DNA of 63,913 nt, filler included, from Pelomyxa schiedti (lineage: Eukaryota > Protista > Evosea): NCBI GenBank assembly GCA_020536535.1. It is 15 parts of 15 records of this genome, joined end to end, with 100 filler letters (N's around TTAATTAATTAA, not from the genome) between each part and the next. Parts side by side here need not be neighbours in the genome. Positions count along the whole stretch, not along the records: positions 44,940 to 46,800 come from JAHLWZ010000441.1; 14 more parts are not named here. The stretch is one strand, 5' to 3'. A program made the translations under genes and the position numbers. Shown one piece after another: positions 44,840 through 48,460 of the stretch. The first letter of the stretch is position 1; every line of letters begins with the position of its first letter. Under the pieces are notes generated by a model. It saw nothing but the letters and a program-made list of their open reading frames with translations, searched no databases and was not told the DNA's origin.

Positions 44840-45258
44840 NNNNNNNNNNNNNNNNNNNNNNNNNNNNNNNNNNNNNNNNNNNNTTAATTAATTAANNNNN
44901 NNNNNNNNNNNNNNNNNNNNNNNNNNNNNNNNNNNNNNNGGGTTATGAATGTATCTGACAGACCCGGCACAACAAACAAACAGGCACTCCTGCTGCCGTA
45001 AGATCTCCCGTTTCGTTGTTGATTTCGGAAATTGATGGAGGAGTACGAATTAGCCAGTTCATGTTTCGGCTTTTACTGGAAGTTGCCGGGAAATCAATGA
45101 TTCAATCACCACATGAGATTGTGCTCCGTCCACTTCATTCTGCCGGTGGCTCGTTCAACTCTGTTTCACCATTCTTTTCTTGCAAACTAGTGCATCAATT
45201 TCAGCAGTTTTTCCCAGCCTCTAGAAGTGTGAATAAAATTTCGCTCGTCGACAGGCCC

Positions 45259-46396
45259 ATGGCGTCCCACAATGCAGATGGCAGCGATGGAGTCACAGTG
45301 ATGGTGCTGGCGGGGGGTAGGTCGACAAGGATGGGAAGGGACAAGCCCACGTGCGTGGAACTAGGTGGAAGGTCACTGTTGTCTTGGGTTTTGTCATGGT
45401 ACTCATATCCCCCCCCCTATGAAAACACGTTTTTGTTATGTGACGCGTTTTTTTGGATCGCTGGCTTCTAAATATATTAAGATTAAGATTTGAACATATC
45501 TCTGCCATAATCGTTCCTTTATTGCTTCCCTCCCTTTTTTTTTTTTCTCTTCGCACTAAGTAGAAAGTGTAGAGAGAGTATTCGCAAAGGACAGAATATT
45601 TGTATCACTTGGTGCCGGGCAACCAATATCCGACGACTTGGACAGGCAGCTCGGCGGTATTGCCGTAGTGCGCGACAGAAGCGAGGCCTCCCATAATGGT
45701 GTGGGAGTTGGCCCGCTTGGGGGAATCCAGGCCGGCCTCAGCAGATGCCAAACCCCTTGGCTTATGGTTCTTCCCTGCGATTGTCCCTTTGTCAGTGAGT
45801 CATTCATAAGAGGAATGACAAGACTCACCCACGGCACCCAAAGCAAGGCAAAATAATTCACTAATTACAATCGCACAATAATAAGACCCGAGTTAAAAAT
45901 AAAAGTAAAACTTAAGCAACTCACCCATAACCAGGTAATTGTTCCCAAGCCCGATAGTGACTTGTACGAGCCCCTTCACGCCCTGTACTCCCGGGAGCTC
46001 CTCCCACAAGTGGATTCGATGGTGGCCACCAACCACCGCCGAGNNNNNNNNNNNNNNNNNNNNNNNNNNNNNNNNNNNNNNNNNNNNNNNNNNNNNNNNN
46101 NNNNNNNNNNNNNNNNNNNNNNNNNNNNNNNNNNNNNNNNNNNCGAGCCCCTTCACGCCCTGTACTCCCGGGAGCTCCTCCCACAAGTGGATTCGATGGT
46201 GGCCACCAACCACCGCCGAGTGTACGACCTCTTTGATGTGTCCTGTACTACATTTGTGGACCGGACTATGTTGGATTCCATTGATGCTGCGTGGGAGTCC
46301 AGCTTCTTCAACATCAACACGCCTTCACAGCTTGAGGCCGCCCAGGCCCATGTTGCTTCAAACTTCACATCAAAGCTTCCTCCATCTTATCACTGA
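45259..46396 (+). CDS. mobA: Molybdenum cofactor guanylyltransferase MobA, 2 spliceosomal introns
   Basis: VLAGGRSTRMGRDK, GPLGGIQAGL, LPCDCPFV, EPLHALYS, FFNINTPSQL. Introns 45399-45567 (GT-AG) and 45848-45934 (GC-AG). A 77-nt gap overlap must be collapsed. Confidence 0.9.
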
Positions 46397-48460
46397 CACC
46401 CTTGTGTGTAATTTTCTGGGGTCAAAGGTGAAGCGTGAAGGTACGTGCATTGCCACACGTCTTCTAATCACAGCAGTATAATTGCAGTTATACCTCACGT
46501 CACCATAAATACCTTTCTGTGCTTAATGCATTTTTTGTCCACTCCCGAGGCCAAACAAAACAAAAAATCTTTCTGTGAAGGCAACGAGAAAAAAATTGAT
46601 CGACAATGTTGGGACTCACACTAGGGGGTTTTTGGTCCAAAAAACGAAAATCTGGTCCAGGGGAAAAAATCCGGTCCGGAAAAAAAATACTTTTTTTCTG
46701 TGAATTTCTGTGGCCTGTGGTTTTGTCACAGGGTGTGAGGCATGTGGTTGTCAGAGCTTGTTGTAACATGGACAACTCAATATTATTGTCACAACCAGCA
46801 NNNNNNNNNNNNNNNNNNNNNNNNNNNNNNNNNNNNNNNNNNNNTTAATTAATTAANNNNNNNNNNNNNNNNNNNNNNNNNNNNNNNNNNNNNNNNNNNN
46901 ACTTGAAAACGGTGGTACGCTGCTGGGATTGAGAGGCCGAAACTGTGAAGTATGAGATGAAGAGCGAAAAGGCGTTAAGAAGGGATGTTGAAAATTGTGC
47001 AAGAGGGAAACTGGCAATAAGGGAGTGCATACATCCTCAAGCACTTGAAACGCCGGCATAGTGGACCCAAACCATAGATTTTTTGTTTTTTTTCCTTTTT
47101 CCTCCCCCAACACCAACCGCAAACAAACGACCCCTCCCAAGTGTAAAACCTCCTGCCCGCTCCAGTTTTTTGTACGCGGTTTTTGGGGCTTTATGCCTGA
47201 CGAAATGAAGGCCTCATTCTCATCACATTTGCACACCGGTGTAACTCCGTTCCTTAAACGTTCCTTAAACTCATTAACTCCGTTGCCTAAACGCGCCGGA
47301 AACTCTACAAGCGGGAATAAAAATTGGTTTTATCCCCGGAGGAGGGTTGCCTGTGTTACTGGGTAAAGACAAGAAAAAAAAATTGGTTGTTGCATAGTGA
47401 TGGGACGCAATAAACCAACAAGAGCAACAACTGAGGTAGACACAGGAACATCGTTATTTGTGCCTCCAAGTGTGGTGACAAGTGCGTTGTTGTGATGATG
47501 GCAGAGAGGGGGAACAATGGCGGTGACAACAGGGCAACAACAGAGTCAACAAATGTGGTGAGTGCTTTCAGTGGGGCAGGGACTGGCGTGGTGGCAACTG
47601 GTGTGGCAGTGAAATATGTGGTGGCTGCCATGGGGGGAGCTCCAACATTAATAACAAGTGTGGTGACCAGTGTGGTGACTACTGCAGTGACAGGTGCGGC
47701 GATGAGTGTGGTGATGGGTGTGGTGACGGGTGCAGTGAAAAGTGCCAGGATGGGTGTAACTGGTGGGATGAGTGCAACAAAGGGTACTTCAACTGGATTG
47801 CTACCAACCGGTGCCACACACACTACTACAGTGTTGTCCCTTTAGCTAACAAACAATCAGCAGCACCTGCTTCCTCTCAACCAAAAAGAAACATACCCCC
47901 AAAATCAACAAAAAAACCTTCAAAATATAAAACTAAAAAACCCAAATCTTCTGTGTACTTTAGCAAGTACACGAGCTTTAGCTCTATGGACACTTTGCGG
48001 ACTCTACATGAATCCTGACTCTCAAGATCCAATGCAGGCTTGATGGAATTACTGGAATAAGGCAGTGACGATCTTATGAGACTTAATTAAGGTAATCTCG
48101 ACTGAGAATTGGACAACAGCATGGCTTTGAAGCTAACTGCACCTAACCACACCAACCTAATTATCCTTTGAACACGTGCAACCCAAGCACGAGAACAAGC
48201 AAGAGAACCTTTACACTCTCACTCTCTTTCATTCTTTTCCCTCTGTGGGGCTTTATTCTCTTCCCACAGAAGCTAACACTTCACAAACCAAAAAACCCAA
48301 ATTGTCACAAAACAAAAAACCCAAATCTTCAAAATCAATTCAGCCACCAGAACTTAAAAAACCTAAACATTCACATGCTCTTCGTGTACCACATAAACAT
48401 GCACCCTCAACCTCACTTCAACATTTTGAATCAAGCTAACCACACTTAATCACACCAAAA

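What the first reader, a model, noticed from the sequence alone, without database searches (positions are those of the whole stretch)
45259..46396. Intron-containing mobA: a eukaryote apparently able to make molybdopterin guanine dinucleotide
Seen: a complete MobA-like reading frame (LAGGRSTRMG.DK, GPLGGI, PCDCP, EPLHALYS, FFNINTP) is restored only by removing two spliceosomal introns, so this is a nuclear gene rather than bacterial contamination. Established: MobA adds GMP to Mo-MPT to make bis-MGD, the cofactor of prokaryotic DMSO-reductase-family enzymes (formate dehydrogenase, Nap/Nar, TMAO/DMSO reductases). Characterised eukaryotic Mo enzymes (sulfite oxidase, nitrate reductase, xanthine oxidase family, mARC) use dinucleotide-free Moco. 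LAGG is MobA-like, whereas the CTP-using MocA typically has AAG. Inference: this protist may run a laterally acquired bis-MGD pathway with one or more DMSO-reductase-family enzymes for anaerobic metabolism.
Basis: partly seen in the sequence, partly recalled or inferred. Interest (0 to 1): 0.85.

Follow-up and report, generated by a model that had tools for sequence, protein, structure and literature searches.

The report
Amoeba gene for a bacterial cofactor
An oxygen-avoiding giant amoeba has its own spliced gene for the enzyme that adds a guanine nucleotide to the molybdenum cofactor, a cofactor form that reviews say occurs only in bacteria and archaea.

Summary
This is a spliced nuclear mobA-like gene of the anaerobic amoeba Pelomyxa schiedti (GenBank KAH3722472.1, Pelo_18822).

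The N gap is false: 77 identical bases flank it and contigs of all four runs join across it. Intron 2 (87 nt, GC-AG) is removed in RNA contigs only. No RNA covers intron 1. It is placed at 45399-45567 by allele indels, by homology and by an intron at the same codon in a second eukaryote. That placement corrects the GenBank model.

Every exon scores best on MobA models, most MobA-type residues are kept and the fold matches MobA. It misses NCBI's MobA cut-off. Mastigella eilhardi and an unidentified eukaryote carry close relatives in one clade, with no resolved donor.

Papers already list two 'FdhF' enzymes and a NifU-FdhD fusion in Pelomyxa, and list this gene in a supplementary table, but do not discuss the cofactor. 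The best reading is that these amoebae make bis-MGD for their own DMSO-reductase-family enzymes. Activity is untested. The amoeba's published enzyme list shows no molybdopterin-synthesis genes, which hints at cofactor scavenging.

The parts
45259..45398 (+). Exon 1: start codon, LAGG loop, RMG and the conserved lysine (E. coli K25)
   Evidence: Best NCBIfam hit TIGR02665 MobA, profile 2-34, E 6.9e-07; Pfam PF12804 32.8 bits, cut-off 27. The upstream in-frame ATG at 45061 is changed, and a 1-nt indel at 45238 shifts the upstream frame, in the other copy, so 45259 is the likely start.
45399..45567 (+). Intron 1, GT..AG, 169 nt, phase 2 (ends inferred, no RNA across it)
   Evidence: About 37% GC, stops in all frames; 5 indels between the two copies; an intron at the same codon and phase in the relative on L007, 9822-9870; restores a segment that prokaryotic relatives have and the GenBank model lacks.
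45568..45847 (+). Exon 2: aspartate matching E. coli D71, GPLGG motif, PCD motif (D101)
   Evidence: TIGR02665 E 3.4e-12 against MocA TIGR03310 E 0.12; only PDB sequence hits are E. coli MobA, weak; RNA contigs cover 45627-45845.
45848..45934 (+). Intron 2, GC..AG, 87 nt, phase 0, with an in-frame stop
   Evidence: Skipped in RNA runs X3 and X4 only; 31% GC; 88 nt in the other copy; GC-AG introns are 1.59% of P. schiedti introns (PMC8887013).
45935..46043 (+). Exon 3, first part (to the gap), with EPLHALYS
   Evidence: Best hit MobA NF001457; RNA contigs cover it.
46044..46143 (.). False assembly gap, 100 N
   Evidence: All four runs join across it; absent from JAHLWZ010002198.1.
46144..46220 (+). 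Second print of 45967-46043: a 77-base contig overlap, not a real duplication
   Evidence: Exact 77-base match; 77 is one of the k-mer sizes in the published assembly (PMC8887013); the joint skips 177 bases.
46221..46396 (+). Exon 3, last part, with FFNINTP (E. coli N180, N182) and the stop codon
   Evidence: MobA models E 1.4e-08 and 1.9e-08, no MocA hit; this stretch retrieved the P. schiedti protein at 98% identity; RNA contig X4 runs to 46511.

Best explanation
A nuclear, expressed mobA-like gene of about 234 codons, gained from a prokaryote by an ancestor of Pelomyxa and Mastigella and since given introns. Its product most likely binds Mg-GTP and Mo-molybdopterin and transfers GMP to make bis-MGD in the cytosol. 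The NifU-FdhD fusion would add sulfur to the cofactor and pass it to the amoeba's own DMSO-reductase-family enzymes (Pelo_6878 and Pelo_718, both annotated FdhF). Shown here: gene structure except the exact ends of intron 1, splicing of intron 2, purifying selection, MobA-type residues and fold, and a three-member eukaryotic clade. Taken from papers: the client and chaperone genes. Inferred: the reaction, the location, the client and the lateral origin.
For: Splicing and false gap. Selection and indel pattern. MobA outranks MocA in every exon and in the GenBank protein, 89.3 against 31.6 bits. It has the MobA letter at L12, G14, D71, P79, G82, N180 and N182, where E. coli MocA has T, A, N, L, S, D and D; K25 and D101 are kept too. 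The nine best fold matches are MobA structures, E 2e-11 to 3e-10, ahead of GlmU and IspD (model pLDDT 85). Clade of P. schiedti, M. eilhardi and the L007 eukaryote, SH-aLRT 95. Only these three stand above the prokaryotic hits in a profile search built from them. NifU-FdhD is reported from the same two genera (PMC10711303). FdhD binds the bis-guanine-dinucleotide cofactor (PMC10609526), so it implies a need for MobA.
Against: No activity or cofactor measured. Below NCBIfam's MobA cut-off of 151.85 bits. E. coli N53 is not kept and A81 is G; the nearest prokaryotic relatives also lack N53. NifU-FdhD went to mitochondria in yeast while FdhF has no targeting signal (PMC8887013), so the partners may sit in different compartments. 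I could not fetch the client genes, so their introns and completeness are unchecked. No molybdopterin-synthesis genes appear in the amoeba's published enzyme list. Tree is the quick search only.
Confidence: 0.75

Rival explanations
1. A Moco nucleotidyltransferase with another or relaxed nucleotide choice. It would make MCD or a single MGD for bacterial-type xanthine dehydrogenases rather than bis-MGD.
For: Four xanthine dehydrogenases are listed for P. schiedti. N53 and A81 differ from E. coli MobA. The MobA cut-off is missed.
Against: None of the MocA letters is present at the seven positions where it matches MobA. The MocA model scores 58 bits lower. The ABA3-type sulfurase listed beside them is the eukaryotic route for nucleotide-free Moco (established knowledge).
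Confidence: 0.12
2. A salvage enzyme. It binds bis-MGD released from eaten or symbiotic prokaryotes, or runs backwards with pyrophosphate to free Mo-MPT for the xanthine dehydrogenases.
For: Only last-step Moco enzymes are listed for the amoeba, while its Syntrophus and Methanoregula symbionts have moaA, moaC and moeA. C. elegans takes up Moco from its food (PMC9793310; PMC9370521).
Against: I found no report of MobA acting in reverse. Two FdhF-annotated proteins and FdhD point to a need for the dinucleotide form. Absence from a curated list is not absence from the genome, which is about 82% complete by BUSCO.
Confidence: 0.08
3. A contaminant, chimera or decaying gene copy with no function.
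For: The piece is short (1861 bases), has a gap and has no neighbouring gene. The host carries several prokaryotic endosymbionts. The RNA contigs carry the letters of the other copy, so expression of this exact copy is not shown.
Against: Spliced RNA, pN/pS 0.20 and no exon indels, an orthologue in Mastigella, and a shared intron on a 365-kb contig among eukaryotic genes. No prokaryotic protein is closer than about 41% identity.
Confidence: 0.03

Closest known systems
E. coli MobA, molybdenum cofactor guanylyltransferase (EC 2.7.7.77; PDB 1fr9, 1e5k) and A. fulgidus MobA (3ngw)
   Same: Same fold (TM-score 0.65-0.69 by query). Same residues at L12, A13, G14, G15, R19, K25, D71, G78, P79, L80, G82, D101, N180 and N182.
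   Different: Nuclear gene with two introns; about 26% identity to E. coli MobA; N53 not kept, A81 is G; no operon or mobB neighbour seen; below the TIGR02665 cut-off.
E. coli MocA, molybdenum cofactor cytidylyltransferase (TIGR03310)
   Same: Same Pfam family (PF12804); K25 and D101 are shared.
   Different: MocA has T-A-A-G, G-L-L-T-S and D-I-D where this protein has L-A-G-G, G-P-L-G-G and N-I-N. It scores 31.6 against 89.3 bits.
Published Pelomyxa FdhF and NifU-FdhD (PMC8887013, PMC10711303, PMC10579272)
   Same: Same organism. These are the likely client and chaperone. This gene is row Pelo_18822, EC 2.7.7.77, in a supplementary table of PMC10579272.
   Different: None of the three main texts contains 'molybd'. 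The cofactor consequence, the Mastigella orthologue and the shared intron are not described there.
Eukaryotic Moco pathway (Cnx/MOCS, gephyrin, ABA3)
   Same: P. schiedti lists ABA3 and xanthine dehydrogenases like other eukaryotes.
   Different: [quoted passage not shown]

Membership tests
Pfam PF12804 MobA-like NTP transferases | Score above the gathering cut-off of 27 bits | tested here: met
   Exon 1 32.8 bits and exon 2 43 bits, each alone.
MobA guanylyltransferases (functional class) | LAGG nucleotide loop and lysine 25 | tested here: met
   L12, A13, G14, G15, K25 aligned. Their role is from established knowledge of the E. coli MobA structure; the primary paper was not held.
MobA guanylyltransferases (functional class) | G78-P79-L80-A81-G82 motif and D71, which differ from MocA | tested here: met
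   G-P-L-G-G and D; four of five motif letters match MobA, A81 is G, none is the MocA letter.
MobA guanylyltransferases (functional class) | Metal-binding D101 and the C-terminal N-x-N-T-P motif | tested here: met
   D101, N180, N182 kept.
MobA guanylyltransferases (functional class) | Asparagine 53 near the guanine base (E. coli) | tested here: inconclusive
   Column holds S; it borders a gapped loop, and prokaryotic relatives named MobA have C, A or S there too.
MobA guanylyltransferases (functional class) | MobA fold closer than GlmU, IspD or MocA-type folds | tested here: met
   Ranks 1-9 are MobA structures; GlmU rank 10, IspD rank 11, a mycobacterial Rv0371c homologue rank 49. The model is of the GenBank protein, which lacks 12 residues.
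MobA guanylyltransferases (functional class) | Forms MGD from Mo-MPT and GTP | not testable with these tools
   Needs an assay or complementation.
NCBIfam TIGR02665 MobA equivalog | Whole-protein score of at least 151.85 bits | tested here: not met
   89.3 bits for the GenBank protein; exon scores 29.5, 46.8 and 16.9. It is therefore filed as MobA-like, not as a member of this equivalog.
MocA cytidylyltransferases (TIGR03310) | T-A-A-G and L-L-T-S motifs; cut-off 186.45 bits | tested here: not met
   Motifs absent; 31.6 bits.
Complete bis-MGD pathway | A DMSO-reductase-family client in the same genome | not testable with these tools
   The rest of the genome could not be reached. Papers list Pelo_718 and Pelo_6878 as FdhF.
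Complete bis-MGD pathway | Own molybdopterin synthesis (MoaA, MoaC, MoaD/E, MogA/MoeA) | not testable with these tools
   None is named in the amoeba's published enzyme table; that table is curated, so this is no proof of absence.
Spliceosomal nuclear gene | Introns removed in RNA, with GT/GC..AG ends | tested here: met
   Shown for intron 2. Intron 1 is inferred only.

The most novel reading that the evidence does not exclude
Pelomyxid amoebae make bis-MGD, a cofactor not yet found in any eukaryote, but cannot build molybdopterin themselves. They take Mo-MPT from food or endosymbionts and finish it with laterally gained MobA and NifU-FdhD, for at least one DMSO-reductase-family enzyme that is not a standard formate dehydrogenase. 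That would be a cofactor-level dependence of a eukaryote on its prokaryotes.
Probability: 0.25. Interest if true: 0.85.

Novelty: new variant of a known kind. Interest (0 to 1): 0.64.

Why it matters
Current reviews say that eukaryotes lack dinucleotide molybdenum cofactors and the DMSO reductase family. A spliced, conserved mobA in three eukaryotes, in a lineage that also holds FdhD and FdhF-annotated genes, is a concrete candidate exception. It supplies the cofactor step that the published formate dehydrogenase idea for Pelomyxa needs but never addressed. It can be tested cheaply by complementing an E. coli mutant. It also bears on how the amoeba trades formate and hydrogen with its essential methanogen. 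Interest is tempered because the enzyme is of a well-known kind, the gene already carries this name in GenBank, and the clients were reported before.

Tried and rejected
Real duplication of the EPLHALYS block around the gap: rejected, it is a 77-base overlap.

The GenBank intron 1 (45365-45560): disfavoured. It removes a segment that matches the MobA profile and all close relatives, and the relative's intron sits at my position.

A GT donor at 45795 for intron 2, which looks more canonical: rejected by the RNA joint.

An N-terminal extension from ATG 45061 or 45097: disfavoured, because the other copy breaks that frame.

Template-switch oligo at 45627 as a transcript start: not accepted; one contig, inside exon 2, more likely a truncated cDNA.

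More eukaryotic copies: none among 160 loci from the genome and metagenome scans; only L001 and the L007 organism show an intron-like split.

Donor: the careful tree did not finish in two runs; the quick tree leaves the eukaryotic clade in an open fork. The symbionts' own MobA proteins were not available as named rows.

Identity of the L007 eukaryote: a paper search for its run gave nothing.

The MobA/MocA specificity paper was not held.

Left out by rule: I did not build, search or fold a joined, corrected protein. Exons were searched by reference, and whole-protein searches used the GenBank protein P0001 that a tool returned. Pelo_718 was read in a paper's table but has no reference here, so it was not sent to any tool.

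Full report
The piece and the gap. The piece (44940-46800) holds one gene, from ATG 45259 to TGA 46396, split over two frames. The last 77 bases before the N run are the same as the first 77 after it. Contigs of all four public runs go straight from 45966 to 46144, skipping 177 bases. A second assembled copy of the locus has no gap. The gap is a scaffolding artefact over a contig overlap; 77 is one of the k-mer sizes used in the published assembly (PMC8887013). The true sequence is continuous and in frame.

The organism. The last exon, searched alone, found one protein at 98% identity: 'molybdenum cofactor guanylyltransferase [Pelomyxa schiedti]', KAH3722472.1. The query ran from 45857 to 46393 only to set the length; residues 97-179 alone were scored. 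The protein's contig, JAHLWZ010002198.1 (L001), starts at the same base as the piece but differs at 55 positions and 12 indels. The window therefore holds a second allele or a recent duplicate. The runs mix letters of both copies, and the RNA contigs carry the L001 letters.

The introns. Intron 2 is shown. Both single-cell RNA runs skip 87 bases and the two intron-holding runs do not; of four equivalent placements only 45848-45934 reads GC..AG. GC-AG introns make up 1.59% of this genome's introns. Intron 1 is not covered by RNA. Three lines place it at 45399-45567. Five indels between the two copies fall inside it. The MobA profile matches exon 1 up to residue 45, past the GenBank donor, and close prokaryotic relatives have a segment that the GenBank protein lacks. 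A relative on a 365-kb contig (L007) has a 49-nt GT..AG intron at the same codon and phase. The corrected product has 234 residues against 225 in GenBank. Whole-protein work used the GenBank sequence, which lacks 12 true residues and has 3 from the intron end if my placement is right.

It is a working gene. Between the copies there are 11 silent and 7 amino-acid changes (pN/pS 0.20, p=0.0008), and 0 indels in 705 exon bases against 6 in 256 intron bases (p=0.0004). With the spliced RNA, this rules out a prokaryotic contaminant and makes decay unlikely.

What the protein is. Each exon scores best on MobA models and far lower, or not at all, on MocA. The GenBank protein scores 89.3 bits on TIGR02665 and 31.6 on the MocA model; both are under their cut-offs. 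Against E. coli MobA and MocA it has the MobA letter at L12, G14, D71, P79, G82, N180 and N182, shares K25 and D101 with both, and departs at N53 and A81. The predicted structure (pLDDT 85) matches nine MobA structures before any GlmU or IspD. It works like MobA on all sequence and fold evidence. It is not a member of NCBI's MobA equivalog by score, and its activity is untested.

Relatives. Two searches gave the same two nearest relatives. P0125 is from Mastigella eilhardi, the sister pelomyxid. P0002 lies on L007 among G-alpha, importin-beta-like, Vps54/syndetin and XRN genes broken by introns, so it is eukaryotic but unidentified; it lacks intron 2. The three form one clade (SH-aLRT 95) in an open fork with unclassified bacteria and gammaproteobacterial MobA (quick tree only; about half of the genome loci were thinned out). 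A profile of the three found no further close member among 146 hits, in a database that holds EukProt, and scans of genomes and metagenomes gave no other intron-split copy. One old gain from a prokaryote fits best. The donor and the direction are not proven.

Clients, from papers. PMC8887013 reports a NifU-FdhD fusion and an FdhF homologue without targeting signal. PMC10711303 finds NifU-FdhD in Mastigella too, the same pair of genera that carry this mobA. PMC10579272 names a second FdhF, Pelo_6878. FdhD binds and sulfurates the bis-guanine-dinucleotide cofactor (PMC10609526). Read by eye, Pelo_718 has four N-terminal cysteines (about 6, 10, 14, 48) and a cysteine near 138. E. coli FdhF has its cluster cysteines and selenocysteine 140 at like places, but followed by a histidine that Pelo_718 lacks. 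From my knowledge of the family, this marks a DMSO-reductase-family protein that is probably not a standard formate dehydrogenase. I could not test this with a tool.

What is already known. The gene is row Pelo_18822, EC 2.7.7.77, in a supplementary table of PMC10579272, with no comment; the three main texts do not contain 'molybd'. [quoted passage not shown] My paper searches found no account of a eukaryotic MobA, within an open-access library only.

An open lead. The amoeba's table lists ABA3, MobA and four xanthine dehydrogenases, but no MoaA, MoaC, MoaE, MoeA or gephyrin, while two symbionts' tables do list such genes. If they are truly absent, the amoeba would finish a scavenged cofactor, as C. 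elegans uses Moco from food. The table is curated and the genome is about 82% complete, so I give this reading 0.25.

Verdict. It is a new variant of a known kind: a known enzyme, already named in GenBank, in a domain of life said to lack its product. Interest 0.64.

Noticed in passing
window 45365-45567 and GenBank KAH3722472.1: The GenBank model seems mis-spliced at intron 1 (45365-45560). It drops 12 residues of the first helix and adds 3 from the intron end; anyone expressing the protein should check the junction first.
   Followed up: yes
window 44940-46609 against L001: Two copies differing at about 3.5% of positions (55 substitutions, 12 indels) with similar flanks. The runs mix letters of both, so these are divergent alleles or a recent duplicate.
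   Followed up: partly
window 46578-46800: Contig depth rises from about 45 to 300-850 with many loose ends in X1 and X2: a high-copy repeat begins just downstream of the gene and probably ends the contig.
   Followed up: no
window 45627: An RNA contig of X3 starts here with a template-switch oligo attached, inside exon 2; probably a truncated cDNA.
   Followed up: partly
L007 (ERZ21831265 ctg81793l, 365 kb); also L002, L173: A long contig of an unidentified eukaryote in a metagenome, about 41% GC, carrying the mobA orthologue among eukaryotic genes. It may be an unsequenced pelomyxid; its bin could show the whole cofactor pathway.
   Followed up: partly
P0125 (Mastigella eilhardi, EukProt EP01105): The Mastigella protein is 152 residues and begins at the GPL motif, without the LAGG half; probably a truncated or unspliced transcript model.
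   Followed up: no
Pelo_718 in PMC8887013 Table S2: The protein called FdhF has a different cluster motif from E. coli FdhF and no histidine after the likely metal-binding cysteine, so it may be another kind of molybdoenzyme. Read by eye only.
   Followed up: partly
PMC10579272 supplementary file 3: The amoeba's cofactor list has only last-step Moco enzymes (ABA3, MobA) and no molybdopterin-synthesis genes.
   Followed up: partly
L003 1162-2187, L009 and L010 8180-9217, L011 4614-5636, L008 12204-14149: Several of the nearest prokaryotic relatives lie just downstream of a gene of about 340 codons (radical SAM by Pfam in L003, L009, L010; not scanned in L011). Another lies near MOSC, MoaA-like and MoCF_biosynth genes.
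   Followed up: no
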